Assembly (NCBI RefSeq): GCF_002571385.2
Contig: NW_019218439.1
Span: 1-62,131, forward strand
Source: Stylophora pistillata
Lineage: Eukaryota
Direction: 5' to 3'
DNA: 62,131 nucleotides
In this document: positions 39,801-56,093 of the stretch, piece after piece
Layout: each line of letters starts with the position of its first letter
How positions within the stretch are numbered: the first letter of the stretch is position 1
Notes under the pieces: generated by a model
What the model was told of the DNA's origin: nothing
What the model saw: only the letters and a program-made list of their open reading frames with translations
The model's database searches: none
Made by a program: the position numbers and the translations under genes

Positions 39801-42800
39801 AAATATGGACCGTGACACCATTGTTCATCATAAACTTAACCCAGCCATCAAAGCCCGCTATATTCGCCTGCAACCCTTAACTTGGCACAACTGGATATCT
39901 TTGAGAATGGAATTGTATGGCTGTTCAGATGGTACGTGAAGTTAATTCTTCTTAAAACAGGACTCTCCATTTCTTACAATGTCTGCATCCGATACAGGTC
40001 TTTTTACTCAAAAAACCTTTTACCCTTTGCATACATTTGCTCACTTTCGTTATTTCCTTCTTGAGTATAGATTTTGTTTTGGGATATTAATTTGCTCTAT
40101 TCAATTCCATTTTCAATAAACCAAAAAGAATGTCAAACGGATCTTGGCTTAAAAAATAGAGCTATTCCTGATGCACAGTTGAGTGCTTCTTCCCAACTGG
40201 ATCGTGACCATGTCGCATCGCAAGGAAGGCTGGACTATGAAGGAGAATTGTGGAAAGCATCGGCTTGGTCATCTGGGATAGTTGATCAAAGCCAATGGCT
40301 CCAAATTGATCTTCGAAGTCTATTCGTTACAGTAACCGGAGTGGCGACACAAGGACGTAGCGGCTGGCGCAGGAACTGGCAGTGGGTAACACATTACATG
40401 CTGCAGTTCTGTGATGATGGAGAGAACTTTACTTTCTTCAAGGAACTAGGAAAATCAGAGGCAAAGGTAATACGATTTTTTTTGTTTTGTTTTGTTTTAG
40501 TTTTTTTCACGGACATGTAACCGTGTGTTATTTTACAATGATAGATATTTAAACAAAAAAATTTACGTTCCCTCCATTTAGAATTTTAGTGGAAACAGCG
40601 ACAGCAATACTGTTGTTCATAATGACTTAAACCCACCAATCAGAGCTCGTTATGTCCGCTTTCTCCCACAATCTTGGCATAAGCATATATCAATGAGGGT
40701 GGAGCTCTATGGATGCCTCAAATATAGTAATAAAGGTGAGGAACGCAGCTTGGACTTAAGATAAGAAGATGTCGTGACGAAATAGCGAACGACAAAATTA
40801 TTCGAAGAGCGCTATATATATAGCACAATGTAGACTGACTAGTGGACACAGTCAGTATGGCAAGTTGTAACACTGGGTTTTGGGATAAATGTGGGCTCGG
40901 TAGACACATCATCGATCCTACCTCATCGATGAACTGTGCTTGCACATCAACTTTGTTTGGCCTTACCTCACGAAACTTGGCCTGAATGCGTTTCTCCAAA
41001 ATACGAATTATCGTTCAACCGAATCTGCCTGATATGCAGCCGAAGGGTACTAGCTGACGCGATTAGATATAGTAACTATTCCTTGAAATGATCCTCACTT
41101 GTATTTACTCTCTATAGTTTCTATGAATGTATCCGAATGTCGAGGAGCTCTCGGTATGCAGGACGGTATAATATCAGATGGACAAATCAGTGCCTCTACG
41201 GAAAGACATAGCTCTCAGATTGCAATCCTAGCTAGGCTACACCGTGCACCAATGACTGCAGAAAAGGCTGGATCTTGGTCAGCAGAGAAAAATGATTTAC
41301 ATCAATGGTTGCAAGTGGATCTAGGAAGCCATTATACCAGAGTAATGCGAGTTGCAACGCAAGGAAGGTATGATGACAGCCACTGGGTGACAAAATACAA
41401 GTTACAGTATGGCAATGATGGAGAAAAATTTCAATACTACAGGGAACTGGGAAAATTTTCAGATAAGGTAATATGATAACCGGCTGGATCTACAGCAATC
41501 TCTGGTATTTCATTCGTAAATGCTTAACTTTCAACCTTAATTCTTATTCAAAGACCCAAAATTGCAAAAAAAAAACAAAACAAAACAAAAAAAAGACAGA
41601 GCAAAATCAAACAAAGTGGTGATTTCCTCGCGGATATCACAGTAACCTGTGAGGCGTGAGTAGTCCAGTGGTCAGTGCGCTGGACTCTAGTTCAGACGGT
41701 CCGGGTTCAAGTCCTGGCTGGGGCTTGACGTTGTGTCCTTAAGCAAGACGCTTCACTCACATTGCTTCGTTTTCTCGGGACGAAGAAAAGGACGTAAAGC
41801 CGGAGGTCCCGTCTCCTGCATCTGTCAGTTAATTTGGTTGGGCAGGGGACGTTATAGAACGAGATTACTATGAGGTGGTCTGGCCTGTTTATTGGGAATT
41901 AGGGGGAGGGGGCATCTGTAGAATTTCTTCTTTATTAATTGTAAANTGCAGCTGGCAGTCTGGAAAAAGTCCCCCGCACAGTGTTGTAAAGCGTATTAGA
42001 ACATTGCATGGAAATGCGATATAGAAACTGACATCATTATCATTATTATTAAACTGCATTATAAAAACCAAATAATGTGCCTAAAAAATCCGAAATCAGA
42101 ACATGCTCTATTTCATGGTAGTGAATATTCGTGCTCATAAGAATCAATAGTCACGAGAGGAAGAGGAAGCTGGTGACTTACCTTCGGAAACTGTATCCTT
42201 TCGGAAGAATTATCCAAATGAGAGATTTCAACGTATTTAAGCAATTGCAACGCTGAACACTTATAAACCATTAACGGTTCTTCTACTTTTTTAACTTAGG
42301 ATTTTGTTGGAAATTCTGATCGAGACACCATCGTTTTTCATGAACTAAACCCACCAATCCACGCACGTTTTATCCGCTTTCAACCACAACACTGGTTTGG
42401 CCACATAGCCATGAGGGTAGGGGTATATGGATGTCAAGGTAAACGAAGAATTGAGTTTCAAATCCTTGAACTAATCAAAAATGCAAAGAACATGTGATTA
42501 GTATACACCAATGGAATTCACATATTGCATCATTTTCGCATTATTTCAGATTTCAGCCCCCCTTTTTCGTCACTGTTCCATCTATCACAACTCTTACTGC
42601 GCACTTTCATTTTTTGCTTTAACTCGCTTGCTGTCAACTTTTGGAACTACCGGTCGAGATTACGTCACAGGTTCTTTAACAACAGTACCTGCCCGCTTTT
42701 TTGTTAGTTTGTTTGTTTTCTTTTTCACCCTGGAATTTGAAGGTACGCGTTGTATTTTTAACCGTAAACTTTCATCGATTTCTTAAAACCCTCAGAATGT

Positions 42801-44626
42801 ACTAATCCTCTCGGTGTGGGCAGTGGTGCAATATCTGACAAACAAATAACTTCCTCTTCACAACTGAACGATGCTCATGCCGCTATGCAGGGAAGACTCG
42901 GCTCCAAGGCCACTAAGAGTAAAGGAGGATCCTGGTCCGCTGCTTCGAACAACTACAGCCAATGGCTTGAGATTGATCTGCGAAGTCAGAACATCAATGT
43001 GACCCGCGTAGCCACTCAAGGAAGACCTGATGCCAGCCAGTGGGTGACGAAATACAAGCTGCAGTACAGTAAAGATGGCGTAAATTTTCAATATTACAAA
43101 GAACAAACGAAAACTGCACATAAGGTGACGTTTATGTGTTCACAAATATGTTAACTTCAGTTTCCCTTTCAAATTTTCTTTATTCATCTTAAGATTAGCT
43201 TCTTTGCCATGCTTTTTTCAATGAACTTTACAGCCTGTAGATATTATGCCCTATAACCAGTGTTAAGTTTCGCAGCACTTTGGCATATTGATTACAAAAA
43301 GGAATTGCCAAGATAGGTTAAAATGGAAAAATAAAAACTGGATATGTTGAAAGAGGTAAGATTACTTTAGATTTCGGATGGCAAAGATGTTTGACAACAA
43401 AGCGATATACTAAAATATTACCCGGCTTGAACCCTAGTTCTTATGATTATCGAAATTTTCAACTGAGACATTATTCATACGATTGTAAATCTGTAGGTTT
43501 TTGATGGGAACGTTGACCAACACACCGTTGTTTATAATGAGCTTGTCCCGCCCATCACAGCACCTTTCATCCGTTTTCGGCCAGTTGAATGGCATAGTCA
43601 CATATCGATGCGAGTAGAACTTTATGGATGTCAAGGTAATTGCAGGATGTGTCACCTTTCTAAAAAACTTTCATTCAGTTCCCGGTCGAATTCCAATTAG
43701 TTAGGTTTGGTCTAGGAAGCGCACAATACCTTGCAACCTCGAAATAAAAAAGGATGCAAAGCGACTCTTAAAATTTTTTAGTTAAGTAGGTCTTGGAATT
43801 GATATTGAGGCTTCCAAGGAAGAACCTTAAAAGAGATTTTTTTTAGTACTGGCTATGGCTAAACGATCAAGCATTTTCGTTCAACACTGGATTTTTCTAG
43901 TAAGAGGATTTGATATTTCAAGGTGTCTTGTTCTTGATATGTGTGTTTAAGAAAAAAAAAACCTTCCACCCTTTTAGACGACCGTCCCTGTGACAAATCA
44001 GTAGACTGGTGTGGATGGAAAAACGTATATGGTTGGAAAAGAATCAAACAAAAGGATCTTGAGGTCTACAAAGGTACGTGATTACATTTTCAAAACGTTG
44101 ATAAGAATTTTATATTTTATGTCGTTTGTTCTGATCAAAATAAAAAAAAAATATATCTGAGCATTTGTAGCGGATATTGAAGAAAGGATAATAATGAAGT
44201 TACAATAAGAATTAATCTGTTTTCGTCTTTGCTTTTTCCGTTTTAGGTCTCAGTGACGACAACAACTTCGAGGCACATCTTCCTGACAGCGAGTATGGTT
44301 ACATATCAGTTTCAGATGTAGTATTGGATGAATGCTGTTTCACCATTTGCTTTTGGTTGAAAACCGCTGATAGAGGCTTCTTTATGGAATATAAAACTGC
44401 GGGATCAGCCGAAGAAAACGAGGCTCTAGTTTTCGAAATCTATTATGGAGACACATTTTCCCTTCAAAGCGGTGGCAAGAGAAGGTATTCAAGAGGAATA
44501 GGTGTAGGGTTTTTTCTTGTCAGTGTTTAACTCACCACCTTCGTAATTACCTTGACAAAGATGAATCCTTAAAATGATCAATTGTTGCCAAGTTAACTGC
44601 CTAGAACCGTGGCTCGTCCATTGAGA

Positions 44627-44664
<38 letters not shown>

Positions 44665-47600
44665 GCTTCATTTAAAGCTTAAGAAATGGCGTCAGCCAGT
44701 TACCAAATGTTGCAACCAGTCAAAATCAAGATAAATCATAGCTTTGCAAAAGCTAAAGATTTTCCACTTAAAGAAATTCTTTACTTGAATAAGACTAAGA
44801 AATCAAGTGGAAAAAAAGGAGAGTTGTATTAAAGTGAGTATGAACAGTGTATTTCGTTCTTTCTGCACAGCGAGCATTCAATGGACGTGATGGACTCCAC
44901 CTGGCATCACGTGTGTGTCTCCTGGGATGGGAAAGTGAGACAGCTTGTAGTTTTCAAGGATGGTTATAGAAATTTCAAGTTAAATGACTTCTGGACGCCT
45001 CTACTTCAGAAGCCGAATAAGGGTATGAACCTTTTTTTTCTGGAGAAAAGAGGGGTGGGGGTGGGGATCTCATGTTTTGGCAGATGGTGATCTGTCTCTG
45101 AATTGTACTTGGATGTGAACAGGTTCAACGCAGGAATTGATGCTAAAAGATATTCAAGCTTAGTAGACAAACTAAGCCTAAAGGTGAACTATCTCGAGTT
45201 AGGTCTGATAATAGCGACCACTATAGTTTGCAGATAGAGCGTGGATGGCCTGTAATAAGAAAGACGCTTTACGATCAAATACCTCAGTCACTTTCACATA
45301 ATTTGCATATTTTAAGCCGTCTAAACGAAGTCACCCTGAAAAAGAATGCTTTTATTTCGAAACCAGGAGTCGTGACGATTGGGTTTAGAAATAAGAGTGG
45401 AAATGCATCTGCTGTAATTGGTAGACTAAGTGGCTTTAATATTTGGAGTCTATTGGTCACGGAAAACGAGATACTGCGCATGTCATACGGTTGTGGAGAG
45501 GTGATTGGCAACGCAATGGACTGGGGAAAAGTTACAAATGGGCTGATTGGAGAAGTGGAAGTACGATCGCTTCCAACTTGCAACGATGATAAACGTAAGG
45601 CATACCTTGATAAACATCATTATTGTTATCGTTGCAGGCCAAACGTTAAGAAAAAAATTTTGTTGTGGTTTTTGTTTTGGTAGTAATCTCTTTACTTTAT
45701 CAACGCGCCAATTTCTAAACATAGTATTTGTATGACCGCCAGGTGACAGGCTTGTGGTAGATACCGTCATTTCCAAGCCAAATGGAACTGCTGTTCTTGT
45801 GAGCCCGACGTACAAAAGATCAAGTGACGGGAAAAGCAGATGCTTGAGGTTTCGCTACATGCTACGGGGGTCTCGAAAGAAAATGTTGACAATTTTCCAG
45901 AAAATGGAAAGTTATAGTGAAATACCAATCTGGACTTGGAAACGCAACACAGGCCGGAACTGGGTTTATGGTCAAGTACCGCTGACCTCTACTTCGAAGT
46001 TTAAGGTAATATCAAAACTGTGGAACTTACTTCTACATTGGTACCAAAATAAACGATGTAGGCTATTAGTTCCTTCTGGTCAGCTGATGATATTGCTAAT
46101 AAGATTCGAAACTTTGTTCTGCTCTTCTAGTGCTGCAATACCTGAAGGCATATAAACGAATTTCGTTTCCTCCTTTAGATTTTGATTAAAGGACAAAAAA
46201 CCAGGAAGAAAGACTTGATCGCTGTAACAGGAATATATGTCGAAGAAGGACTTAATTGCAAACTAAGGCCACTGTCCGCAAAACAGGGTAACTCGCTTAT
46301 ACGTGTCTTGCCTTGCAATGTTACCACATTATGATTCTCTGTTAAATGATTTGTTATAGTTTTTATAGCGGCCGATAAAATCAGCTTTAAATATCAAAGA
46401 ACGGAAGACTGCATCACTTTTTTAAACGTTTTCTGAGGATCACCTCCCTTATATTTCCTTTGGAACAAAGTTAAGCATTCATTTGATATGTTAGATATCA
46501 CTTTCTTCAAGAAAGTAATAGCCCTTCGTGACTTGCCTTTGTAGCTACTCTTCAGAAAATTCGATTTATTACACTTATCGACTCTTTGCTATGCTGTTTA
46601 TTTATCTAGGTTTTGCTGTTTTATCTGTTCGATCTTTTTCTTTATTCTGTGTTGTTCTGTCTGTTTATGTAAAGTATACACTATCTCTCTATATATTTCT
46701 ATTTTACAGCTTGCAATGAGGACTTAACCAATCCATCAGGATATATCTTTTCGCCGACCTATTCCGGCATGGTTCCCTATGATATCGCTTGCACGTGGTA
46801 CATTACCGTTCCGCGCAATAACAAAATTCGCTTGGAGTTCCAAGATTTTCGTCTTCCAGACCATCCCACGTGCGACGGCTGCAGTCTTCAAATTTTTGAT
46901 GGAAGCGAAACGTCTGCTCCTATGATTGGTCGATTCTGCGGTTATTTGTATCCTCCTATTGTGGTTTCTTCGTCAAATCATCTCAGGATTGCTCTGCGTT
47001 GCGCTGCCAATTCATACACAGCAAGATTCAAGATTTTCTATAACTCCACGGCGGGTATGAAGCACTATATCTCATTGAATTTTCCCCGCAATCAACCATT
47101 TTTTTAAGGTCTCTCCCTCTTTCAGAGTTCTGATTGAAAAAAGAAGATATAGTAATTACATGAATATGTCACGCTATAATTTCATGTTGCCATTTACTTT
47201 TCAATTTTTCAGCTAACGAAGATTTAGAGTCGTCCTGTTCACTCCAGCAAGGTACACAAAGATCCTTGAGATATTTTTTCCATATGAGTTTGGGCTTACG
47301 TTTTGTAAGACTGTAGCAGTTTTAACGAGTGAATTTATCAATTAGACTTATTGTCGGGTACTACCAGATTTCTTGTTAGGTAAGTACCGTTTTCTGTGCA
47401 AAGCTAATTCGAAAAATAGCTACCTAATTGAGTCTTTGTTCAGGCTTTTGTCCCAGAACTACAAGCGTCTTGGTGCTTGTTTTCGTTTTAACTTGCAAAA
47501 AAGGTAAAGTCTGTTTACGAGCCTAGTGGCCCATTAGGCCGGTGCTTAACTCCGGTTTCTAACTTGCAAACGATGATCTTAAATCACTAGTGCTTATCGA

Positions 47601-50600
47601 TCAAAACCAATGAGCTTGTGTCTTGCAATCTGTCTAAGAATGCCCATCAAGCTGCAGATGTGAAGAGTTTGGTGGAGAAATAGACAAGAGGATCCTGGTG
47701 AGAGGAGAAGATTTACTGAGTGTACCGAATGATCTTCCAACAAACGTCGGAGCAGTGTATGTAACATTTGGGGTTCTTTAACCCTCACTTTTCGTTTTAT
47801 CATCTTCTCTTTTCCAAAAATAAAATTAACAGTTCCTTCCTCGTGTTTCTCCAAGTAACCGATATTCTTGCTACTTGTTTAAAAAGGTTTTTTGGCCAAA
47901 ACCGGATCTCCCAATTACGCGAGGAGGACTTTGCAAACCTCTTGAAATTGGAATATATGTAAGTAAACATGTAACATTTTTTTTTTTGAGATTGGACAAT
48001 ACTTTGTTGCAGAGACTGTATGAATATTGAAAATTTTTCGATCAGTAATCAAGATAGTGGCTAAGACAACCATATGATTTCCTTAAACAACGCCTTGACT
48101 AACAGTTTTCGGGCGAAAGGAGCTTTCGTTGTCTCTGTACTTTCTGGACAAAGACGAAAAAAAAATTTCTCTTTTTAAAACTCAATCCCTTTGATCTGAG
48201 CTTAAAGCTGTTGTGTCACTGTTTTGAAAAAAGTTGTCAATTCTTTCTTTCTCTTCGTCAGTGATGTGAGCTTCAACACCCTGCTTCACGTGGATGAGGA
48301 CAGCTTTCAAAATTTGACATTCGTTAAGACACTGTAAGCATTAAGTAGTTATTATTTTCAAAGTGACTGAGTAACTTTTCCGCCCTCGATTCTAGAGAAA
48401 CGTCGATGATCACGTGGATACACAAAATACATTTTATAACAATCGATATATTCACTTATTTGTCGCAGGAGACTTAATTTTAAGTTTCTTCGAGCTCTTC
48501 CTGTTGGGGCCCTCAAAGGATTATCCAATTTACGTGTACTGTGAGTATTTCGTGTAAATAATGTCATTCTCGTACTTCTTATGCGTTCTTTACAAGACAC
48601 AAATGTGTTCAGATCGAAAAAAACATTTTCGAGAGAGAATACGGGTAAGGGAGAATTAAGTTATCTACCTCTTTTTAAGTGAATAAAAGGGATTGACTAC
48701 TTTCTTTCAGTGACTTAGGAAGGAACCTTCTTCGGGTTGTATTCAGCGAGATGCTCGATGGACTTTCGAATTTGGAAATTTTGTATGTACTCATTTTTAG
48801 ACCAATTAGTTTTTGTTGTTATATTATAGTTATAAGTCTATAATAATCAGCCAAATCATATTTTCTCTTGGTTTTGTTACAGGAGTCTTCGCTCTAACCA
48901 AATCGAGCGGTTGGAATATGGTGCTTTTAGGAATAAAAGCAACATGACTCATTTGTAAGTACATTTGAGTGGTTCTCAGGTCACTCAGATCAGACTTAGA
49001 CGCTCAGTTTTCAATAAAGCCAATACAAACTGATTTTAAATTTGATCGAAAAAGCTTAATGCGATCAATGCAATATATGATTGGCTATTAGAGTGCTGGT
49101 CTTAAGCTAAGTCAGCAGAAACATCTTGCTCTTTTGTTTGTTTGTTTCATTCTTGTTTCTTTGTAGGTACCTACAAGATAACAAGCTCAAAGAAGTATCA
49201 AATGGGATGTTCAAAGATCTTCTTAAACTTAAACTTTTGTGAGTGCATTTTAATGTCATACTTAGAGTCCAAAACCTGAGAGTTAATTTGTGCATTTGTC
49301 ATTAATTTTTTTTTCTAATTTGTTGCTGTCGTGGTCTTTAGTATTTGTGTTGTTATCTTTGTTGTAAGCGCTGGTAAAACACTTGCTTCTTTTTAATTAT
49401 TCTTATCTTACCAACTTACAACTCACCAGAAATCTCAGCACAAACAGACTGAGGACTGTTTCTAAGGAAACTTTTCAAGGGTTGCAGTCGCTTGAGTATC
49501 TGTAAGTGTTTGACTTTGCTGAGCAAAAGTGAATTACTTACTTACCTACTTAGGGTTTGCACTTTGCTGTAAGACGTTGTTAGCATTTGATCAGTCAGTT
49601 AATGATTTTCTTTCGAAGAACTGTGAATTCGAAATTTAAAGCTTATTTGAAAGGAAAATGCCCCTAGTCGTATTTTTAAGGATTTATTGCAGTTGATGAA
49701 TACTTTCTTGAAACGATTTTTAAACTCAATCATTAAAAAAGGTCGAGGATAAAATTATTTGGGAAAAAGAATTGATTTGATCAAAAGTAGAAATGAACAA
49801 ATTCGCTTTTGAATGGATAAATAATAGCCTAAGTCAGTTTGATAGAAATGTCATATGCATCAGTAAATTTGGTAATGGACAGGGTGGAAAGTGTTCTTCT
49901 TGACTTTTTTCGTTCATAAATTCAGGTACCTGGATAAAAACGAACTTACCCTGAAAGTACCCCCAGATGCGTTCAATGACCTCAAGAACCTGCGATATTT
50001 GTGAGTCATTTGTTTAACAATCCTCGTCAGTCTAAATTGCTTGCAATTGGTTTTGTCCAGGACATCGATGTGGAATAATGACAGGAATTAAAGCAAAGTT
50101 TCCCTCTTTACAATTCTAACAGGAAACTGGATCACTTCATACTATGTTGCTACGCCAAGAAGTCAATTGGAGGAGTGGATTGCGAATCCCCAGTCAATGA
50201 ATTCTCAAGTTGCGATGACCTCATGAAAAATAAAACTCTCCAAACTTGCATCTGGATTCTGGGAATCCTTGCTTTCTTTGGTAATCTGCTTGTCATACTA
50301 TGGCGGATAGTTGATACAGAAGAGAACAGGGTCCACTCGTTCTTGCTGAAAAATCTAGCGCTTGCCGACATGTTCATGGGTGTTTATCTGTTGGCAATTG
50401 CAATTATGGACGCAAGGTGGCAAGGAGAATATTTTAAGCACGACCATGAATGGAGGTCTGGTTGGGGTTGTCGAATAATTGGAGTTCTCTCGATGCTGTC
50501 CAGTGAGGTATCTGTACTAATTCTAACAATCATCACAATGGACAGATTCATTTGCATCGTCTTCCCGTTCAAATTCCGTCGCCTGACGTACAAATCCGCC

Positions 50601-53600
50601 GTATTTACCTGCACTGGAGTGTGGGTATTTGGAATAGTCATCTCCGTGATTCCAATCACTGGACTGAACTATTTTTATGACAAAAGCGGTGATTTTGGTT
50701 TCTACAGTCGTTCAGCGGTTTGCCTTCCGCTTCAGCTATCTGAAGGAACCCCAGCCGGTTGGGAATACTCCACCTCCTTTTTCATCGGGATGAATTTCAT
50801 TTCTTTCACCTTTATCCTGGTGGCGTACCTCTCGATGTTTCTGACGGTGAAACGTGTAACCCACGCTGTTCGATCGACGAATTTAAACAGAGAATCTGCT
50901 ATGGCAAAGAGACTTGTTTTCATAGTGATGACAGACTTCTGCTGCTGGATGCCCATAATAATTATCAGCATTTTGTCACTGACAGGAAATTTCAATGATC
51001 CAGACAAAATTGCCTACGTGTGGATTGCAGTGTTTGTTCTTCCTCTCAATTCCTCCCTTAATCCAATCCTTTACACGTTTTCCACCGATAGAGCAAAACG
51101 CAGCTTAAGCCATAAGGGGAAAAATGTCACTGGTTTTGTTATGAAGACTCTGAACAGACGTACTGAAGGTGGGTAAATCTGTTAAAGAATAATTTAGTGA
51201 TCAGATTCTGCATGCTTTACTCATCTAAATTGTTCAAAGAAGACATAGAAATGATCTTGTTCGGCTGTAGTTTAAGAGTACTATTTCCCATCGTCTTCTC
51301 GAACAACAAATTGCTGCAAAGATAGGAAATTAAGAGAAAACATAACACAAACGTGGGACAAAACCGCCAGGAAGCGGTTTCAATTGAAGGCTAATAACAA
51401 TCACCCCATGATGCATCAGAGGCGACCTAACTAGACTAGTTGATTTAGTAATTGATTAGGCACAACGCTTGTTTTGAAACTCACAGTATGAATGACGTTG
51501 TGTCCCAGTTACCATAAGATCCTTTTCATTCTTCTATCTTAAAGCGTAACTTTATTCATGGACAGTACCCTATTCTTTTTCTTTTGAAGATCGATCGTCC
51601 AACGCCTCGAACATGTCTGGAAAAACGTTGCTTTCAAAAGTCCTTTCCATTTCCAGCCCCAAGCCAAAAGTGAGGGAAATGAAAAAGCCGCAGCCCGAGA
51701 TTGTTGTTGTGCAAGCTAATCTGAAGCTTATTGAAGAAGTAAATATCTTCAAGGATGATACTGTTGGAAAACAATCCACAGTAAGTACTTCTCCGTGAAA
51801 ATCAAAATGACACTTTTATGGCTACAGACCAGAGACGATCAAGTTAAGAGACTTAATCTCCCACTGTGTTGGCCGTATTTCCACTTAAGATGGAAGAAGA
51901 GCCTAAACAGAACCAATCTTGTGTTTCGTATTTGTCTTTGGTTGGCACTTACTCCCTGTGGGAGCCGAGAAACATTTCCCTCGATCGATGGAGAGTCTTT
52001 GAATCGAGCAAGGCTTCTTTGACGAATACATCGTTTTTGTCTCATATTTTAAAGATTCTCTAGAAAAGACCTTTCTCATGCCAATTTCTTGAACTTTTCT
52101 GAAAAAGTTAATAAATCTTGCTCTGATTAATTTCCTATCAACCAAGTTTATGCAAGGATTTTGCGTGTCTTACAAACATTTGACAAGTAGTACTCCCATT
52201 GTCACTATTTACCATTTCCATGTATGACGTGTACCAATGATTATATGTACCATTTCACTTCTCGCCTCTACAGGGCTATGTTACTGCTTGGTGTGAGGTA
52301 GGAGGTGCTTTCAATATTGTGTTGCTAAAGTACTTTGGAAAAGGAATGAAGGAGGAGTGGACTCGGGAAGTGGCTATAGTACAGCACTTTTCTTGTGACA
52401 AGAAGCCTCAGTCCAATGTGTTACAATATCGGTGGCACTCCAAAAGTAAGTGAACCTTACCTTTATAATATAACTACCAGTTGTTAGAATTACCATCTCC
52501 ACTTTTCTCACAATATTTAAAAATGCCAGATTACCTCACAGCTCTCTGCAACATAAAGATGTTTTTTCCCTTTTGTTGCTATTAGAGAATCAACTAGGAG
52601 AAAATTGGGGGTGGGATTTGCGCTTTGGAGGTTTTTTTCTTACTTCATAGGTATGTATTTTATTGTAACTCTGGAGTTTTCTGTGGTATTTTTTCCTCAG
52701 CTAACGACCTGAATATTGAGCACGGCAAAACGAAGATTGATGCTCTACAAGGAAAAAGTTTGTGAGTCATAAATGAATGAGTGCTCTATAATCAAACATA
52801 TTTAAATCTCCATACATTTGGTTTCAAGTAATATAAAGGATTTTGAATGATGTCTTTTCTTTTTTTTCCGAAAGCCTGATATGTTACGACTTTGTGTCAA
52901 GTTCAACCCTGGAAGATTTCATTTGTGAGAAAGGAACTGTCATTGACTTCGAGTCAATTTGTACAGTAGCCTGTGACGTCTTAGGTGCATTAGAAGAACT
53001 ACAGGAACTTGGAGTACTTCATAACAATATCACAACACGTAACATTCTGATCAGCCAGTGCGCTAGGGTTAGTAAAGTGGTAAAAGAACTAGTTTCTTCT
53101 ACAGTCATTCTCACTTTCCGAGTAAGGTAATAAGCCTACAGAGTGTTACGTGACCGGTAGATCACATATATAGCACAGAGATTTTTTGCGAGTCCGAAGC
53201 GAAATCACGAGCGTCGGTCAGAGGAGAAATGCTCCTGCAAACTTTTTCTTTCATAGACAATGATCTCGTTCTTTAGTTGATATTCAAGGAAACTTCGCTT
53301 TGAAAGGCCTCGAAGTTTCCTTGCTCAAAATTTCCTTCGAGCTTTCGAAAATATTTCTTGGGAACAAAGCACATTTCGCTTGCATCGCTTTTTCGATTCG
53401 GAATACTGTATGTCATATCTTTGATTGCTTACAAATCGATCATCTAAACTTCTGCTTCCTTCATAAGGCATTTATTTGCTTGTTTTGGTCGGAGAGAAGT
53501 TATGGTTATTGCCTCTAGAATTTACTTTTATTGTTATGGGTGTAGCTATAGTGTATGATGTATTGTATTAGGACCCAGATTCCCCATCAGTGGTGCATGT

Positions 53601-54175
53601 AACGCCTGATTGTAGTTGTTAAAGACCACGAGTCGTTGAGGCGGAATAAAGCCATCGTTTAAGGTCAAATCCGTTGTAACCCTCCATTATTTTCCGACCA
53701 GATCGGTCACAACAATGGGTTGGAGAGAAGTTATGGTTATTGCCTCCATGCATTTGCTTTTCACAGATTCCTCCAATCAAAGCAATCTTGGGTGGATTCT
53801 CTCGTGCGTCCACGGTGAATGAAGAGAGCGCGTTCACAAACCATGCTATGGATGAACAAAGTTGTTTTGGTAGCCATGTTGAGAAGTTTGGAAAATTGTT
53901 GGCCACACTATTGGGACACTGCCATGGCTCTAGTGAACAGTCCAAGGTAAACATCGATAAGTTAAATGAATTTAAGTTAAAAGTTACTGCCTCGATGGTA
54001 ACAAAGATACGCAATGACCGAGGAACATATGTTTTCTTTTTTTCTCCAAAAGCTACATGAAATTATGAACCTCTGTTTTGAAAAAACACCAGAGAAGAGG
54101 CCCACAGCACGTTGCCTCCGAGAACTCTTGGAAGAGGTGTGGTGCACCAAGGGATTCAGTGATTCATTTGTTTGA
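13916..54175 (+). CDS. Paralog 2: giant multidomain LGR-type GPCR-pseudokinase, ~70 exons, ~4,535 aa (manual model)
   Basis: Every exon identified has an AG acceptor and a GT (one GC) donor with compatible phases and no in-frame stop. Summed exon length is 13,608 nt, divisible by 3. Starts with a signal-peptide exon and ends FSDSFV-TGA at 54173-54175. Confidence 0.8.
14805..19515 (+). CDS. MAM domains 1-3 (exons 14805-14912, 15669-15925, 16424-16547; 16853-16966, 17197-17444, 17825-17939; 18226-18351, 18827-19086, 19425-19515)
   Basis: Three repeats of the three-exon MAM pattern: CxF...CxW; YI..S...ARLxSP..C..F.YHM.G; I.EG....IA(I/L)DD...C. Confidence 0.92.
14999..15038. repeat. (CA)n microsatellite
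   Basis: Perfect CA run. Confidence 0.98.
20137..20290 (-). mobile_element. Copy of the Penelope-type/hammerhead-like short repeat
   Basis: Highly similar to 6151-6290; flanked by TCTGTAATAA (20127-20136, 20291-20300). Confidence 0.7.
20346..20735 (+). CDS. Phase 1-1 exon encoding an unrecognised ~130-aa extracellular module
   Basis: ttaag acceptor, open frame DETTYYVSSYMGKDYK...CSFKVTEP, G/gtagga donor. No family recognised. Confidence 0.65.
21161..21592 (+). CDS. C-type lectin domain 1
   Basis: CQPGW...SCF...W....LC...FLGL....W.W.DG.......W...EPN....C.....WND..C....YICE. Confidence 0.95.
21912..22538 (+). CDS. LamG/concanavalin-A-like domain
   Basis: SMSVFAWV...WNFIGFTYEYYSGVATIWVN...VGAS....FRGQISCLQFYEQALS. 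Confidence 0.88.
22775..23080 (+). CDS. WSC-like domain 1
   Basis: YRSVGCFAD..RA...IEKCA..A...GF.MFAVQY.GQC......YG....C...GKGG.WANNVY. Confidence 0.88.
23095..24510 (-). mobile_element. 5'-truncated non-LTR retrotransposon (CR1/L2-group) with an uninterrupted reverse transcriptase domain, antisense in an intron
   Basis: ORF 24556-23210: RPISLT, QFAYR, DFSKAFD, GVPQGTVLGP, YADD, LLGV. Minus-strand AATAAA and a (TTA)n-type tail near 23095-23120. Confidence 0.93.
25019..25250. mobile_element. Palindromic copy of the Penelope-type/hammerhead-like repeat
   Basis: Inverted arms ttggatatatcaacaaagttgaaatggtaaattggcc / ggccaatttaccatttcaactttgctgatatatccaa; same family as 6151-6377. Confidence 0.72.
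25381..25668 (+). CDS. WSC-like domain 2
   Basis: YVDVGCYRD..RAI...IEKCA...GFRMFAVQYGGEC...YG...C...GKGGTWANRVY; clear internal duplicate of WSC 1. Confidence 0.88.
25907..26314 (+). CDS. C-type lectin domain 2
   Basis: CSPSFFPFHGGCF...NWEQALERCKSEGGTLAKI...YFIGM...WTWIDG...W..GYP...CAYL...C....PLCQ. Confidence 0.93.
27176..27754 (+). CDS. F-type lectin (FTP/fucolectin)-like domain (exons 27176-27285, 27463-27754)
   Basis: LAID...TCFRS..ESDPWWQVNL....V.SVVITN..DC...C...GNYVKI......LVLCQV.V. Confidence 0.85.
28234..29052 (+). CDS. PA14 domain (exons 28234-28430, 28607-28785, 28880-29052)
   Basis: GVLRETW...FDAP....DRYAQRLTAYLQVPQSGSYVFYASCDDSCELW...SQPIFLEK...YRLEV......GKDHLSVG...P......IP...LF. 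Confidence 0.88.
29203..30403 (+). CDS. Unassigned beta-rich module (exons 29203-29283, 29427-29602, 30331-30403)
   Basis: Phase-compatible exons: ...AIVGSKLHISGTHSFCCYGIHCPDCSLQL...PGNYTLKVSYSF...; possibly Ig-like. Confidence 0.55.
30904..31722 (+). CDS. MAM domain 4 (exons 30904-30996, 31200-31456, 31614-31722)
   Basis: CNFESGNCAGW; LKSP...CLRFKYLM; VIFEG...VAIDDISI....C. Confidence 0.9.
31870..32205. mobile_element. Probable MITE
   Basis: Imperfect inverted ends (ttagcaac...gaacggcaa / ttgccgttt...gtgctaa). Confidence 0.45.
32401..33277 (+). CDS. Two canonical LDLa repeats, one degenerate LDLa and a Cys linker (exons 32401-32622, 32842-32955, 33194-33277)
   Basis: C....FQCNNGECV.....CDGDFACKDESDEDNC; C....FACQDGKCI.....CDGNNDCSDGDDENNC; the third repeat lacks the acidic DxSDE. 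Confidence 0.92.
33799..36654 (+). CDS. MAM domains 5 and 6 (exons 33799-33936, 34572-34822, 35017-35116; 35555-35626, 36106-36368, 36558-36654)
   Basis: TPTENTGPSYDHT...YIYIEAS...CIQFWYHMYG...DIALDD; the second copy is divergent (CDF...CDW, CLHFWY). Confidence 0.9.
34895..35005. repeat. Degenerate (ATC/ATT)n trinucleotide repeat in an intron
   Basis: tcattatcattatc...catcatcatcattattatt; it generates spurious poly-H/I/M ORFs. Confidence 0.85.
37078..43635 (+). CDS. Five tandem F5/8 type C (discoidin) domains (exon pairs 37078-37415/37844-37985, 39098-39426/39790-39931, 40129-40466/40582-40735, 41118-41467/42300-42438, 42796-43124/43497-43635)
   Basis: LGM..G.I....I.ASS...GRL....W.....WLQVDL......V..VATQGR....WVT.Y.L.Y / F.GN.D....V...L.P.I.A..IRF.P..W...I.MRVELYGC. 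Confidence 0.95.
38020..38705 (-). mobile_element. Disrupted 3' fragment of a CR1/L2-group LINE in an intron
   Basis: ...FYNSLVLPIFDYADLVWGD...LQILQN / ILDR....S.TDAL..LRWLNL..RR.FHR...HSYNTR...; frameshift/stop near 38540; (TTA)n tail. Confidence 0.85.
41651..42051 (+). mobile_element. tRNA-derived SINE (MIR/CORE-like organisation)
   Basis: A box (tagtccagtgg), B box (gggttcaagtcc), core-like ttgtgtccttaagcaagacgctt, L2-like 3' end tgtaaagcgtattagaaca...attattatt. Confidence 0.75.
43978..46287 (+). CDS. MAM domain 7 interrupted by a pentraxin/LamG domain (MAM-N 43978-44073; pentraxin 44247-44484, 44871-45022, 45367-45594; MAM remainder 45743-46005, 46179-46287)
   Basis: PCD..DWCGW....W; FTICFWLK...WHHVCVSWDG......FKDG...IG.......GRLSGFNIW....EI.....C....GN..DW; AVLVSP...CLRFRYM..G...W......W.YGQV / ILIKG.....IAV..I......C. 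Confidence 0.85.
44628..44661. repeat. (TC)n microsatellite
   Basis: Perfect TC run. Confidence 0.98.
46710..47054 (+). CDS. CUB domain
   Basis: CNEDLTNPSGYIFSP.Y......CTWYI......IRLEF.DF.L.....C....LQIFDG......IGRFCG...P....SSSN.L.I........F...Y. Confidence 0.93.
47213..50000 (+). CDS. Linker, LRRNT and eight LRR exons (47213-47251, 47639-47756, 47887-47958, 48262-48333, 48469-48540, 48711-48782, 48883-48954, 49167-49238, 49430-49501, 49926-50000)
   Basis: CPSSCRC cap; seven 72-bp and one 75-bp phase-2 exons, each LxLxxNxLxxL....F..L..L..L, the classic LGR exon structure. Confidence 0.93.
50123..51168 (+). CDS. Paralog 2 hinge + 7TM exon
   Basis: KLDHFILCCYAKKSIGGVDCESPVNEFSSCDDLM; TMDRF; DFCCWMP; NSSLNPILY; donor G/gtgggt. 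Confidence 0.95.
51590..54175 (+). CDS. Paralog 2 cytoplasmic pseudokinase exons (51590-51780, 52274-52445, 52701-52761, 52875-53067, 53767-53946, 54053-54175)
   Basis: IVLLKYFGKGMKEEWTREVAIVQ..QSNVLQY; LICYDF...TLEDFI; VLHNNITTRNILI; KAILGGFS; HVEKFGKLL; EIMNLCFEKTPEKRPTA...DSFV*. Confidence 0.82.
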
Positions 54176-54330
54176 TCAAACATATGGACAAAAACAATTC
54201 ATAACTTTATAATACATATATTGGTTGAGCTTTTGAAAAACCCATAAGTTTGTCCATCTCTGATAGCAGTAGGGTATAGGCCATAAGCAAAAGAAATGTT
54301 TAGTTTACCAATAACGGTACAGCACACTAC

Positions 54331-54336
54331 AATAAA
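54331..54336 (+). terminator. Candidate polyadenylation signal of paralog 2
   Basis: AATAAA about 155 nt after the stop, followed by a GT-rich tract (ctgtgttgt). Confidence 0.4.
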
Positions 54337-56093
54337 GTGCAATAGTGATTCTGTGTTGTAAATAGTTTGAGATTATGTGCAGTGTTTTGGTACGAAATGT
54401 ATATTCAGTTAGGAAAATAGAGAGTCTGGAAAATGCTCATTTTCTGAAGAGCCCTACAGTAATCTGAGCTCATTGTGTTGCTCCGTACGTAGTGTTACTT
54501 TTTATCCTTCATGTTGAATCAGATTAGTAAACTTTTAAACCTAAACAAACGGTAATGGACACTGTACTCGTAATTTCCCTTAAAAATATTTACACCTCAG
54601 ATCGTCTACGTATGCTTAGGGCTCCCTATAGAATATTCTTTGACTCTTATACAAAGGTACAAGATCCTCAATTTCCAAGGTCTAAATTTCAGCTCTCGTA
54701 ATGCCCTAATAGTCACAAAACTAATAAAACACTCAGTGAAAACCCTGAATACTCTTTATGTACGCAATCATTATTTATAGTTTGTTCACTTGCCAAGGAC
54801 AAAGGAAAGCATTATTCGCTGTTGCTCGCCATTATGCCCTTGTCCTGCTCTTTTGAAGTCGATTTGTAGTCCGATTCAAAAGTGATTTCCCTTTCCCAAG
54901 CGAGTAAAACCCAACTCATTCACTACACATTTAGTGGTTTAACTGAAGTTTCCGAACTGAATGGTCAAAGAACTAAACTGGAACACAAAATCTAACAGTT
55001 ATCGGGAAGAAGGTCAACTTGTTTCGGAAGGGCGTAATCAATCGTATGCAATGCTGGGCTGTTGTTGATTGGGATTATGCTAATTTTACTACGCGGGAGG
55101 GGGTCTGGTACGAATCGCTTGCTTGTGCTAATCGAGCGATCAGTTGCGATGTTTAATTAGAGAGGTTCAAAAACCAAATTTAGACGGTAACTTGAATTGG
55201 TCAAACCACGGCAACTGGACTTAACTGTGAAATTTCTTTTTTTTTTAATCTTATGAACAAAAGGTGATTCTTTTTAGGAGACACTTAATTTTTATTCAGC
55301 TGACCATTATGTCTATAGTCTAGTAGTCTAGCACCACTGACTCTGATCTGAAGGATGTGCCTTTAATTCTATCTTAGCAGTCCAACAAAAGACGTTGGAG
55401 TGTAAAACTGTTTTTCTGGTTTAACTGACTCCAAACTCCATGGCCAAGTTTATTTCGCACTATTCAAATTAATACAGTACAAGAGGACTTATTGAACTAG
55501 GTGAACTTGGAGAAGATAATGAGAAGTAGATATCGTGCATGTTTGTATATTTGTGCACAGTGATCAAAGCAGCCGTAGCTTTCGTTAACTGACAGTACAT
55601 TAGGCAACATTAACAACTAATGAGTCCAATCGAACATATCGTAGAAAGAAATAAAGATGAAAACTTAGGATAAAACTTGCTGTGCTAGGATAAAGCTAAG
55701 ACAAATAAATATAAACGGGTAATGATAAAAAGCTAGCGCAGATTTCCCTCCAGTTGTATACTGTTGTCTTTAACTTGCATTTATTGTTATAAAGGTGCTT
55801 TATATCACTATGACAACATTTTTTTTCAATTACAACTCGTGGTTTTAATAATGTGTGCTTTTATTAGTTTCCTGCGCTGACAAAAGCTTGTTTACAAATA
55901 AGGATTTAAGAACATTGTTTTTCGGTTGACTGTTTAATTGGAGTTTCCTGGAAAAAAATTTCAACTCGTATGGCAACAAGTATTTTTTCAGAGTTTCAAG
56001 CCGAAATCAGTTTCTTTACTTGAAAAAAAAAAAAAAAAAAATTCAGTCTCGAGGTAGGAGCAATATTAAATTCTATGGTGTCTGTGGCGTTAA

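What the first reader, a model, noticed from the sequence alone, without database searches (positions are those of the whole stretch)
50123..54175. Animal class A GPCR (LGR) fused to a cytoplasmic kinase-fold domain: a 7TM receptor-(pseudo)kinase
Seen: the 7TM exon has no terminal stop before a phase-1 donor. Six further phase-compatible exons encode, in the correct order, beta3 'VLLK', alphaC 'WTRE', 'SNVLQY', hinge 'LICYDF..STLEDF', catalytic loop 'HNNITTRNILI', 'KAILGGFS', an alphaF-like 'VEKFGKLL' and 'IMNLCF..PEKRP'. The same fusion with the same exon boundaries occurs in the paralog at 997-5055, so it is conserved and not a chance juxtaposition. Established: LGRs (glycoprotein-hormone receptors, LGR4-6, RXFP1/2, GRL101) have short tails without enzymatic folds. 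GPCR-enzyme fusions are mainly known from oomycetes and amoebozoa (e.g. GPCR-PIPK). Inference: this is a receptor class combining G-protein coupling with a built-in kinase-like scaffold. I do not recognise a described animal family with this architecture, but cannot confirm novelty without a search.
Basis: partly seen in the sequence, partly recalled or inferred. Interest (0 to 1): 0.95.

Follow-up and report, generated by a model that had tools for sequence, protein, structure and literature searches.

The report
Coral GPCR fused to a pseudokinase
A stony-coral hormone-receptor-type GPCR (LGR/relaxin-receptor family) really is spliced in frame to a cytoplasmic tyrosine-kinase-like domain that has lost its catalytic residues; this receptor design is conserved in corals and sea anemones, sits unremarked in gene catalogues, and was not described in the papers I could search.

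Summary
The 7TM exon (50123-51168) has no stop before a phase-1 donor. Contigs from three poly(A) RNA-seq runs in three studies, plus raw reads from a fourth, join it in frame to six downstream exons ending at 54175. Every predicted junction was seen as a GT..AG joint, and intron 1 has no sense-strand depth.

The tail matches Pfam PK_Tyr_Ser-Thr. A family profile hits JAK/TYK2 kinase domains in the PDB (5e-10). An AlphaFold model of a same-genome paralog's transcript product finds only protein kinases by Foldseek (RET, EphA3, JAK3; 2.7e-10).

The catalytic motifs are degenerate (HRD to HNN, DFG to GGF, no Gly-rich loop), so it is a pseudokinase. It is under purifying selection (dN/dS about 0.13).

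At least five or six loci in this genome share the layout. NCBI models from Acropora, Porites and Nematostella carry 7tm_1 plus the kinase domain; Exaiptasia models show only the tail.

GPCR-kinase fusions are published for oomycetes, amoebozoans, choanoflagellates and sponges, with the statement 'not in other metazoan lineages'. This is therefore a new variant of a known kind.

Function is inferred, not shown: a non-catalytic scaffold on a G-protein-competent LGR. The joined spliced protein of the window gene was not searched; exons were searched one by one.

The parts
50123..51168 (+). Exon 1 of the described unit (gene B): LRR C-terminal cap/hinge, the seven transmembrane helices and helix 8. 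It carries DRF, CWMP and NPILY motifs and ends in a phase-1 GT donor without a stop.
   Evidence: Pfam 7tm_1 2.5e-35. Motifs read. RNA joints 50000/50123 and 51168/51590 are.
51590..51780 (+). Tail exon 2: a low-complexity linker, then the start of the kinase N-lobe (LKLIEEVNIFKDD).
   Evidence: GT..AG joints 51168/51590 and 51780/52274 in X3, X4, X10 contigs and X24 reads. The linker has low pLDDT in the paralog model.
52274..52445 (+). Tail exon 3: candidate beta3 Lys (VLLK), alphaC Glu (WTRE) and beta4 (SNVLQY).
   Evidence: Translation. Aligned with the family. Joints.
52701..52761 (+). Tail exon 4: a 61-nt variable insert between beta4 and beta5.
   Evidence: Joints 52445/52701 and 52761/52875. 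Translation.
52875..53067 (+). Tail exon 5: beta5, hinge, alphaD-alphaE and a degenerate catalytic loop (HNNITTRNILI in place of HRDLAARN).
   Evidence: Pfam PK_Tyr_Ser-Thr 2.8e-6, 27.3 bits, profile positions 78-137. HMMER alignment to JAK3 VHRDLAARNILVE.
53767..53946 (+). Tail exon 6: degenerate DFG (ILGGFS), a short activation segment, and alphaF (VEKFGKLL).
   Evidence: Joints 53067/53767 and 53946/54053. Alignment of lggfg to IADFG.
54053..54175 (+). Tail exon 7: alphaH-alphaI (IMNLCFEKTPEKRP), the C-terminus ...SDSFV and the stop codon.
   Evidence: Pfam PK_Tyr_Ser-Thr profile positions 233-257. Depth continues into the 3' UTR to at least 54487.
48711..50000 (+). Five one-repeat LRR exons (48711-48782, 48883-48954, 49167-49238, 49430-49501, 49926-50000) joined to the 7TM exon.
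   Evidence: GT..AG joints in all four runs. Each exon translates as a 24-residue LxxNxL repeat.
17193..47107 (+). Probable upstream ectodomain exons of the same gene (MAM, C-type lectin, LDLa, F5/8C, pentraxin, CUB). They are colinear with Nematostella LOC5517652. Continuity with the LRR exons in RNA was not shown.
   Evidence: tblastn of P0051 against the window gives colinear hits for aa 71-2387. ORFs. Pfam architecture of P0051.
997..5055 (+). Paralog A: the 7TM exon (997-2042 or 997-2057) and six tail exons (2348-2538, 2772-2943, 3284-3344, 3623-3815, 4288-4467, 4936-5055). Same phases and exon lengths as gene B. It ends ...WDTYL.
   Evidence: Sequence and splice sites. It is 82% (7TM) and 42-70% (tail exons) identical to B, with dN/dS about 0.13. 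No RNA was laid on this copy.

Best explanation
The finding is the 3' half of a very large coral receptor gene. Its product is a type C LGR, related to the relaxin receptor and GRL101. It has a mosaic ectodomain, LRRs and a class A 7TM bundle. The cytoplasmic tail continues, after a disordered linker of about 60-100 residues, into a tyrosine-kinase-derived pseudokinase domain of about 250 residues. Most family members end in a PDZ-ligand-like C-terminus.

Shown here: the in-frame spliced mRNA exists; the tail has a kinase fold; the catalytic Asp of HRD, the Asp of DFG and the Gly-rich loop are gone, while a candidate beta3 Lys and alphaC Glu remain; the tail is under purifying selection; and the fusion is shared by several paralogs and by other hexacorals.

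Inferred: the 7TM part still signals like an LGR, because the DRF, CWxP and NPxxY motifs are intact. The pseudokinase does not phosphorylate. It would act as a ligand-controlled docking or allosteric module, recruiting or regulating cytoplasmic partners or receptor dimers. This is how RTK pseudokinases (PTK7, ROR, RYK), JAK JH2 and the kinase-homology domain of receptor guanylyl cyclases work. The C-terminal T/S-x-L/V motif would tether the receptor to PDZ scaffolds.
For: RNA: all twelve listed junctions are GT..AG joints, including 51168/51590. They occur in contigs of three poly(A) runs from three studies and in raw reads of a fourth (4 reads, 3 starts, up to 70 nt on the shorter side). One 887-nt contig runs 50927-51163 | 51585-51780 | 52274-52445 | .. 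| 52875-53065. Intron 1 has zero contig depth. The read orientation fits a + strand RNA. RNA runs hold 0.45-0.51 of the sampled words, and the exons make up 0.485 of the stretch.

Second locus: P0151 is a 417-aa ORF of an assembled contig. It maps in seven colinear pieces at 90-98% identity onto C279 (L008), spanning TM5-7 plus the whole tail. Pfam gives 7tm_1 9.8e-10 and PK_Tyr_Ser-Thr 5e-9.

Fold: the AF2 model has C-lobe pLDDT 80-95. At least 500 Foldseek PDB hits at E <= 0.001 were found, and every hit listed is a protein kinase; the best is RET at 2.7e-10, probability 1.00. The tail profile hits 711 PDB sequences, with JAK3, TYK2 and JAK2 at about 5e-10. ESM Atlas neighbours are all kinases.

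Degenerate motifs.

Constraint: tail dN/dS is 0.13, against 0.10 for the 7TM exon.

Family: the genome holds six exon-5-like loci. The window pair and three others (C279 twice, C81) have the 7TM exon upstream on the same strand. The sixth (C1102) has a 7TM fragment at its contig start.

Other species: Nematostella LOC5517652 (3282 aa) has 7tm_1 at 2666-2930 followed by PK_Tyr_Ser-Thr at 3110-3175. Acropora digitifera, A. millepora, Porites lutea and P. evermanni models carry PF00001 plus PF07714.

LGR identity: the best solved relative is RXFP1, 9e-19.
Against: No protein-level evidence exists, and no test of nucleotide binding, phosphotransfer or G-protein coupling. The structure model is of a paralog's product (P0151), not the window gene, because the window's joined protein could not be submitted. 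N-lobe confidence is only moderate (pLDDT 59-79), and the beta3 Lys assignment rests on motif position. One HMMER local alignment places that Lys two residues from JAK3's. Synonymous sites between the two window paralogs are saturated, so dN/dS is approximate. Both second exons carry an ATG near their start (51613, 2359), so an additional tail-only product cannot be excluded. RNA depth in raw reads is low (121 reads).
Confidence: 0.72

Rival explanations
1. The tail is an atypical but active kinase. It would use non-canonical residues, as WNK, CASK or haspin-type exceptions do, making this a true 7TM receptor kinase.
For: A candidate beta3 Lys and alphaC Glu are conserved across the family. 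Gene B keeps the R-N of the tyrosine-kinase catalytic loop, HNNITTRN versus HRDLAARN. The domain is under purifying selection.
Against: The HRD Asp is Asn in five of the six own-genome paralog exons and in nearly all homologues aligned; the pseudogenised C81 copy reads HSD. The DFG Asp is Gly in almost all members; one Exaiptasia fragment reads VDFS. There is no Gly-rich loop. The catalytic-loop Asn is itself variable (His in the C279 copies). Pfam scores are near or below the gathering threshold.
Confidence: 0.1
2. The joined mRNA is a read-through (conjoined) transcript of two neighbouring genes. The main products would be a normal short-tailed LGR and a separate soluble pseudokinase.
For: An ATG lies near the start of exon 2 in both window copies (51613, 2359). 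Old gene models of Nematostella and Exaiptasia predicted the tail alone (P0094, P0141).
Against: The 7TM exon has no stop before its donor in either window copy, and a transcript ORF reads through the same junction in the C279 copy. Phase and exon lengths are conserved. Intron 1 has no sense-strand depth, and no cluster of read starts was seen. Depth is similar on both sides of the junction. Independent RefSeq models in Acropora, Porites and Nematostella join the two parts.
Confidence: 0.06
3. The tail is an evolutionary relic with no function of its own: a dead kinase domain decaying on the receptor's C-terminus.
For: The catalytic motifs are lost. Tail dN (0.25) is higher than 7TM dN (0.10). 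One genomic copy (C81) is a pseudogene.
Against: dN/dS is about 0.13 with saturated dS. All exons have open frames and intact splice sites in several paralogs that are only 25-40% identical in the tail. Kinase core motifs and the C-terminal W-D-T-x-L are conserved between corals and sea anemones. The C-lobe is predicted to fold with confidence.
Confidence: 0.07

Closest known systems
Type C LGRs: relaxin receptors RXFP1/RXFP2 and GRL101 (cnidarian type C LGRs described in PMC4079206)
   Same: It is a class A 7TM whose best solved relative is RXFP1 (9e-19), followed by TSHR, FSHR and LHCGR. It has one-repeat LRR exons directly upstream. LDLa modules lie further upstream in the same colinear gene. 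NCBI names its homologues 'GRL101-like' and 'relaxin receptor 2-like'.
   Different: The 2014 survey set the tail aside as 'poorly conserved'. Here the tail is about 330 residues and contains a kinase fold. The ectodomain is also far larger (MAM, CTLD, F5/8C, pentraxin, CUB).
GPCR-kinase 'bigrams': GPCR-TKL of oomycetes and amoebozoans, and GPCR-TKL/K and GPCR-TK of choanoflagellates and sponges (PMC5784254, PMC12716839)
   Same: The architecture is the same: a 7TM domain with a C-terminal protein-kinase-fold domain. The kinase part is of tyrosine-kinase type, as in GPCR-TKs. No member of either group has been functionally characterised.
   Different: In those families the 7TM domains did not cluster with known GPCR classes, or were heterogeneous. 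The fusions were reported as absent from metazoans other than sponges. Here the 7TM is an unambiguous rhodopsin-family LGR in a eumetazoan, and the kinase is catalytically degenerate. An independent fusion is the likelier history, but homology of the kinase part to sponge GPCR-TKs was not tested.
Receptor pseudokinases and kinase-homology domains: PTK7/CCK4, ROR, RYK, JAK JH2, receptor guanylyl cyclase KHD (from established knowledge, not tested here)
   Same: A membrane receptor carries a tyrosine-kinase-like domain that has lost catalytic residues and is thought to act as a scaffold or allosteric regulator. JAK-family kinase domains are the best PDB sequence matches.
   Different: Those receptors are single-pass or cytokine-receptor-associated proteins. 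None is built on a seven-transmembrane GPCR. Identity to them is only about 14-18%.

Membership tests
Rhodopsin-family (class A) GPCR | Seven-transmembrane domain matching 7tm_1 above the curated threshold | tested here: met
   122.6 bits against a cut-off of 30.5, E 2.5e-35, profile positions 1-260 of 260.
Rhodopsin-family (class A) GPCR | Activation microswitch motifs: E/DRY, CWxP and NPxxY | tested here: met
   DRF at exon residue 140, CWMP at 274 and NPILY at 313. This is direct reading of motifs. Coupling itself is not shown.
LGR (LRR-containing GPCR), type C | LRR ectodomain directly N-terminal of the 7TM, on the same transcript | tested here: met
   Five 24-residue LRR exons are joined to each other and to the 7TM exon by GT..AG joints in four runs.
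LGR (LRR-containing GPCR), type C | 7TM closest to relaxin or glycoprotein-hormone receptors | tested here: met
   The paralog product P0151 has RXFP1 (7tmw_R) as best PDB hit at 9.1e-19, then TSHR, FSHR and LHCGR.
LGR (LRR-containing GPCR), type C | LDLa module(s) in the ectodomain of the same protein | tested here: inconclusive
   LDLa-like exons at about 32.3-32.7 kb are colinear with the LDLa region of Nematostella P0051. No RNA link from them to the LRR exons was examined.
LGR (LRR-containing GPCR), type C | Ligand-dependent G-protein signalling | not testable with these tools
   This needs cell-based cAMP or Ca2+ assays.
Eukaryotic protein kinase superfamily (tyrosine-kinase-like branch) | Bilobal kinase fold | tested here: met
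   Foldseek on the AF2 model of P0151 gives at least 500 PDB hits at E <= 0.001. Every hit listed is a kinase, with RET, EphA3, JAK3, LCK and KIT on top (TM-score by target 0.5-0.57). The model is of a same-genome paralog, not the window protein.
Eukaryotic protein kinase superfamily (tyrosine-kinase-like branch) | Sequence match to PK_Tyr_Ser-Thr or Pkinase above the curated threshold | tested here: met
   Window exon 5 alone scores 27.3 bits against 23.1. P0151 scores 36.3 bits. The Nematostella full-length model scores only 21.6 bits, below threshold. The tail profile hits the PDB at JAK3 4.7e-10.
Eukaryotic protein kinase superfamily (tyrosine-kinase-like branch) | Catalytic residues: Gly-rich loop, HRD Asp and DFG Asp | tested here: not met
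   HRD reads HNN (HNK, HSD or NNN in single copies), DFG reads GGF/GFG, and no GxGxxG is present. It is therefore a pseudokinase, not an active family member.
GPCR-TK / GPCR-TKL/K (PMC12716839) | 7TM domain with a C-terminal kinase domain in one polypeptide | tested here: met
   Spliced mRNA, the transcript ORF P0151 and RefSeq models.
GPCR-TK / GPCR-TKL/K (PMC12716839) | Common descent of the 7TM and/or kinase domains with the choanoflagellate or sponge families | not tested
The paper reports none outside sponges among metazoans.

The most novel reading that the evidence does not exclude
Hexacorals, and possibly other cnidarians, possess an old family of hybrid receptors in which a hormone-type class A GPCR carries its own tyrosine-kinase-derived signalling platform. 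Ligand binding to one molecule would then drive both G-protein signalling and RTK-style assembly of cytoplasmic partners. This would be a fusion independent of the protist and sponge GPCR-kinases, and a natural experiment in how GPCR and kinase-receptor signalling can be wired together in an animal.
Probability: 0.3. Interest if true: 0.8.

Novelty: new variant of a known kind. Interest (0 to 1): 0.66.

Why it matters
Two surveys of GPCR-enzyme fusions bear on this. One states that they are 'rare or even nonexistent' in metazoans (PMC5784254). [quoted passage not shown] The LGR evolution literature set the cytoplasmic tail aside (PMC4079206).

Here an expressed, selectively constrained, multi-copy LGR-pseudokinase family is documented in a reef-building coral. 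Fused homologues are present in Acropora, Porites and Nematostella, and Exaiptasia has the tail. This extends the GPCR-kinase architecture into eumetazoans and onto a well-understood receptor class.

It gives a tractable model, since Nematostella LOC5517652 is in a genetically manipulable animal. The question it opens is what a kinase-fold module does on a GPCR tail.

It also flags that the many 'GRL101-like' genes reported in coral expression studies are not all ordinary LGRs.

Tried and rejected
1. Joined protein. Exons were searched one by one by reference. Database proteins (P0151, P0051, P0094 and others) stood in for the full tail.

2. Single tail exons against Pfam. Exons 2, 3 and 6 gave nothing. 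Only exons 5 and 7 matched.

3. phmmer of P0151 against PDB sequences found only GPCRs and no kinase. A family profile was needed.

4. The search for homologous proteins with the Nematostella tail found only itself in the 1805-5743 aa length window. This is a limit of the tool, not evidence of absence.

5. The exon-5 profile against 1.84 billion representatives mostly returned unnamed single-exon ORFs from ENA or Logan contigs, so their organisms could not be named. The long multi-kinase hits (plant LRR-RLK-like, JAK-like and others) are generic kinases, not family members.

6. Tail exons downstream of four further close 7TM copies. C484 shows none in 8.8 kb. C799 is hidden by an N run and the contig end. 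C688 has only an exon-2-like hit before an N run. C693 gives weak exon-3-like and exon-5-like hits. The N runs were left untouched.

7. Eight literature searches for an LGR, GRL101 or GPCR with a kinase or pseudokinase domain in cnidarians found no description.

8. Earlier notes of the scan held nothing on this.

9. No complex prediction was run, because no specific binding partner is claimed.

10. RNA was laid only on gene B. Paralog A's junctions are predicted, not observed.
Full report
**Observation**

The ORF covering 50175-51176 is a rhodopsin-family 7TM domain (Pfam 7tm_1, 2.5e-35, full profile). The exon starts at 50123 behind an AG. It ends at 51168 on the first base of a codon, before GTGGGT, and the reading frame reaches a stop only inside the intron at 51174-51176.

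Six further exons follow: 51590-51780, 52274-52445, 52701-52761, 52875-53067, 53767-53946 and 54053-54175. All have AG acceptors and GT donors and compatible phases (1, 0, 1, 2, 0, 0).

Taken alone, exon 5 matches Pfam PK_Tyr_Ser-Thr at profile positions 78-137 (27.3 bits, above the curated 23.1). Exon 7 matches positions 233-257 of 258. This is the right order for one kinase domain.

The paralog at 997-5055 has the same seven-exon plan with identical exon lengths. Its exon 1 has two in-frame donors (2042 or 2057), and its exon 3 has a GC donor.

**RNA evidence**

The window comes from a stony coral: the runs that hold it are labelled coral metagenome or a single coded organism. Poly(A) RNA-seq runs hold 0.45-0.51 of the sampled words of 50123-54175. 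The seven exons make up 0.485 of that stretch.

I laid three poly(A) runs from three studies, plus one run of raw reads, on 48700-54500. Every predicted junction appeared as a GT..AG joint.

- The critical joint 51168/51590 was listed as 51163>51585, cut +5. It occurs in one contig per run, with 149-196 nt on the shorter side, and in 4 raw reads with 3 different starts.
- One 887-nt contig runs 50927-51163 | 51585-51780 | 52274-52445 | .. | 52875-53065.
- Intron 1 has zero contig depth. In the raw reads, the only reads there lie in the opposite orientation.
- Read orientation fits a + strand RNA.
- Five upstream 72-75-nt exons, each encoding one 24-residue leucine-rich repeat, are joined to each other and to the 7TM exon.

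It is not met.

**Rule followed**

Exons were searched one at a time by reference. Database proteins that already contain the joined sequence of relatives were used for full-domain analyses. N runs were left as they are.

**A family, not a one-off**

Exon 5 finds six loci in this genome: the two in the window, C1102, two on C279, and C81.

- On C279 (both copies) and C81, a 7TM exon lies upstream on the same strand, and exon-3-like, 5-like and 6-like exons follow in order, plus an exon-7-like one at the two C279 loci. Over aligned segments, 7TM identity to gene B is 52-60%. Tail-exon identity is only 25-52%.
- On C1102 most of the 7TM region is an N run, but a 7TM fragment sits at the contig start.
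- The C81 copy has eight stops in its 7TM exon and is a pseudogene.

The genome holds at least 72 LGR-like 7TM exons. In most of them the open frame runs only a few dozen codons beyond the 348-residue match. The tailed receptors are among the copies closest to gene B (56-87% identical in the 7TM), apart from the pseudogenised C81 copy (45%).

Of four further close copies, C693 shows weak tail-like hits and C688 an exon-2-like hit before an N run. C799 is hidden by a gap and the contig end. C484 shows no tail in 8.8 kb.

**Independent transcript support at a second locus**

P0151 is a 417-residue ORF of an assembled contig in the Logan collection. It contains TM5, TM6, TM7 with NPILY, the linker and the entire tail. 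It maps in seven colinear pieces at 90-98% identity onto the C279 locus L008. Pfam finds both 7tm_1 (9.8e-10) and PK_Tyr_Ser-Thr (5e-9) in it.

**Other species**

A profile of exon 5 from the six genomic copies was searched against 1.84 billion representative proteins. It gave 72 hits at E <= 1e-10.

- P0051 is Nematostella vectensis LOC5517652 isoform X2, 3282 aa. Its domains are C-type lectin, F5/8C, LDLa, five MAM, laminin-G, FN2, pentraxin, CUB, LRR, and 7tm_1 at 2666-2930. A PK_Tyr_Ser-Thr match follows at 3110-3175. That match scores 21.6 bits, just under Pfam's cut-off. This may be one reason the architecture has gone unremarked.
- Searches seeded with P0151 and a Porites model found NCBI models that carry both PF00001 and PF07714. 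They are 'G-protein coupled receptor GRL101-like' from Acropora digitifera and A. millepora (579-932 aa, several with LRRs), 'relaxin receptor 2-like' from Porites lutea, and an unnamed Porites evermanni protein.
- Older tail-only models exist for Nematostella (XP_001631855/A7S952) and Exaiptasia (XP_020909115). UniProt names them 'Protein kinase domain-containing protein'.
- An ENA contig of an unnamed organism with different base composition (GC 45% against 38%) shows a CUB exon and a 7tm_1 exon, then exon-3-like, 5-like and 6-like exons on one strand.

The fused architecture is therefore shown in stony corals (Acropora, Porites and the window's species) and in the sea anemone Nematostella. 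Exaiptasia shows the tail only. Its range outside Hexacorallia was not established.

**The whole gene**

The window from about 17.2 kb to 54.2 kb is colinear with Nematostella P0051 residues 71-3282. The order is MAM, C-type lectin, LDLa, MAM, pentraxin/MAM, CUB, 7TM and tail. Additional F5/8C ORFs at 37-43 kb are not matched in P0051. The finding is thus probably the 3' end of a gene of about 37 kb for a protein of roughly 3000 residues or more. RNA continuity upstream of 48.7 kb was not examined.

**What the tail is**

By sequence, the family profile of the tail hits 711 distinct PDB sequences at E <= 0.01. JAK3, TYK2 and JAK2 kinase domains lead at about 5e-10.

By structure, an AlphaFold2 model of P0151 was built with a 29-row family alignment that included the window's exons as separate rows. 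Mean pLDDT is 67.8, the C-lobe is at 80-95, and the N-lobe at 59-79. The post-TM7/helix-8 stretch, the linker into the start of the N-lobe, and the insert encoded by exon 4 all fall below 50. Foldseek against the PDB returns at least 500 hits at E <= 0.001. Every hit listed is a protein kinase, led by RET, EphA3, JAK3, LCK and KIT (best 2.7e-10, probability 1.00, TM-score by target 0.5-0.57, identity 14-18%). ESM Atlas feature neighbours are all kinase clusters.

The HMMER alignment to JAK3 gives the key equivalences:

- VHNNITTSNVLIE aligns to VHRDLAARNILVE.
- LGGFG aligns to IADFG.

Across the family:

- The HRD Asp is replaced. HRD reads HNN in most copies, with HNK, HSD or NNN in single copies.
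- The DFG Asp is Gly in almost all members; one Exaiptasia fragment reads VDFS.
- There is no GxGxxG loop.
- The catalytic-loop Asn is variable.
- A Lys in the beta3 position (VLLK, LIKHF) and a Glu in alphaC (WTRE, WKNE) are conserved. So are the alphaF Asp-x-x-x-x-G-like segment and the alphaH-alphaI motif (C-x-x-x-P-x-x-R-P).

Gene B keeps the R-N of the tyrosine-kinase signature AARN. The domain is therefore a tyrosine-kinase-derived pseudokinase.

Between the two window paralogs, the tail exons give dN 0.25 and dS about 1.9 (saturated), a ratio of about 0.13. The 7TM exon gives 0.10 (counts summed exon by exon). The tail is therefore under purifying selection.

Most family members end in W-D-T-x-L/V, and gene B ends in S-D-S-F-V. 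Both fit a class I PDZ ligand, S/T-x-hydrophobic. That is a reading of the motif, not a test.

**What the receptor part is**

The 7TM has DRF, CWMP and NPILY motifs. Its closest solved relative is the relaxin receptor RXFP1 (9e-19), followed by the glycoprotein-hormone receptors. Cnidarian type C LGRs (relaxin-receptor-like and GRL101-like) were described in 2014, but that study set the C-terminal tail aside as poorly conserved (PMC4079206).

**Mechanism**

Shown: one mRNA encodes LRRs, a class A 7TM and a conserved kinase-fold domain that lacks the residues needed for phosphotransfer.

Inferred: the receptor still undergoes ligand-driven 7TM activation and probably couples to G proteins like its LGR relatives. 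The pseudokinase, tethered by a flexible linker, would serve as a docking or allosteric module. It would bind or regulate cytoplasmic partners or a second receptor. RTK pseudokinases, JAK JH2 and the kinase-homology domain of receptor guanylyl cyclases work in this way (established knowledge, not tested here). The C-terminal motif would anchor it to PDZ scaffolds.

I put the fusion itself at above 0.9 and the non-catalytic scaffold mechanism at about 0.6-0.7. The rivals are an atypical active kinase (about 0.1), a conjoined transcript with mainly separate products (about 0.06), and a functionless relic (about 0.07).

**Comparison with what is known, and novelty**

GPCRs with C-terminal kinase domains are a known kind. 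GPCR-TKLs occur in oomycetes and amoebozoans (PMC5784254). GPCR-TKL/K and GPCR-TK occur in choanoflagellates, and GPCR-TKs in sponges (PMC12716839).

[quoted passage not shown] Their 7TM domains are not LGRs.

Eight full-text searches found no description of an LGR, GRL101-like or other cnidarian GPCR with a kinase or pseudokinase tail. One coral receptome paper read in addition held none either. The proteins themselves are already in RefSeq and UniProt under uninformative names.

I therefore rate this a new variant of a known kind. It is not categorically new, and not already described in the literature I could search. That literature excludes most subscription journals.

**Verdict**

The finding is real, expressed, conserved and apparently undescribed, and its function is unknown. 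Interest 0.66.

Noticed in passing
window 17193-50000 (+): A chain of ectodomain exons is colinear with Nematostella LOC5517652 (P0051 aa 71-2387). The order is MAM, C-type lectin, LDLa, MAM, pentraxin/MAM, CUB, then LRRs. Five F5/8C (discoidin) ORFs at about 37-43 kb have no match in P0051. If it is all one gene, the receptor is a mosaic protein of roughly 3000 residues or more.
   Followed up: partly
window 23210-24556 (-): A 448-aa ORF on the opposite strand has a reverse-transcriptase-like sequence (…YADDLTL…). It is probably a non-LTR retrotransposon inside an intron of the large receptor gene. It was not scanned against Pfam.
   Followed up: no
window 2943/2944 and 2042/2057: Paralog A's exon 3 uses a GC donor (GCAAGT) where gene B has GTAAGT. 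Its 7TM exon offers two in-frame phase-1 donors 15 nt apart (GTGGAT at 2043, GTAAGA at 2058). No RNA was laid on this copy.
   Followed up: no
window 54158-54172 and 5038-5052; C-termini of P0051, P0094, P0151, P0196-P0206: Nearly all family members end in W-D-T-x-L/V, and gene B ends in S-D-S-F-V. This is a class I PDZ-ligand-like C-terminus conserved between corals and sea anemones.
   Followed up: partly
L008 (G000:C279:40500-50400); proteins P0005 versus P0151/P0152: One assembled-contig ORF (P0005) joins exon 5 directly to exon 7. This skips the 180-nt phase-0/0 exon 6, which encodes the degenerate DFG, the activation segment and alphaF. It could be an in-frame isoform or an assembly artefact. 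No such joint was seen for gene B.
   Followed up: partly
G000:C81:612302-613303 (L010): This family copy has eight stop codons in its 7TM exon but still has recognisable tail exons downstream. It is a pseudogenised member.
   Followed up: partly
G000 genome-wide: At least 72 LGR-like 7TM exons were scored at E <= 1e-20, out of 1222 first-look candidates. This is a very large LGR/GRL101-like expansion, of which the pseudokinase-tailed genes are a small part.
   Followed up: no
L011 (ENA ERZ25073755 contig, 611191-627799): An unnamed organism with higher GC (45%) has a CUB exon and a 7tm_1 exon, then exon-3-like, 5-like and 6-like exons on one strand. The 7TM match is split over two frames. The family therefore extends to at least one more distant genome, which I could not name.
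   Followed up: partly
window 51222-51415: In the raw-read run, the only reads inside intron 1 lie in the orientation opposite to the gene's reads (depth about 1.5). This may be a weak antisense or unrelated transcript.
   Followed up: no
window 51613 and 2359: Both copies have an in-frame ATG a few codons into exon 2. It may be chance, or it may allow a tail-only product from an internal start. No cluster of read starts was seen there, but raw-read depth was low.
   Followed up: partly
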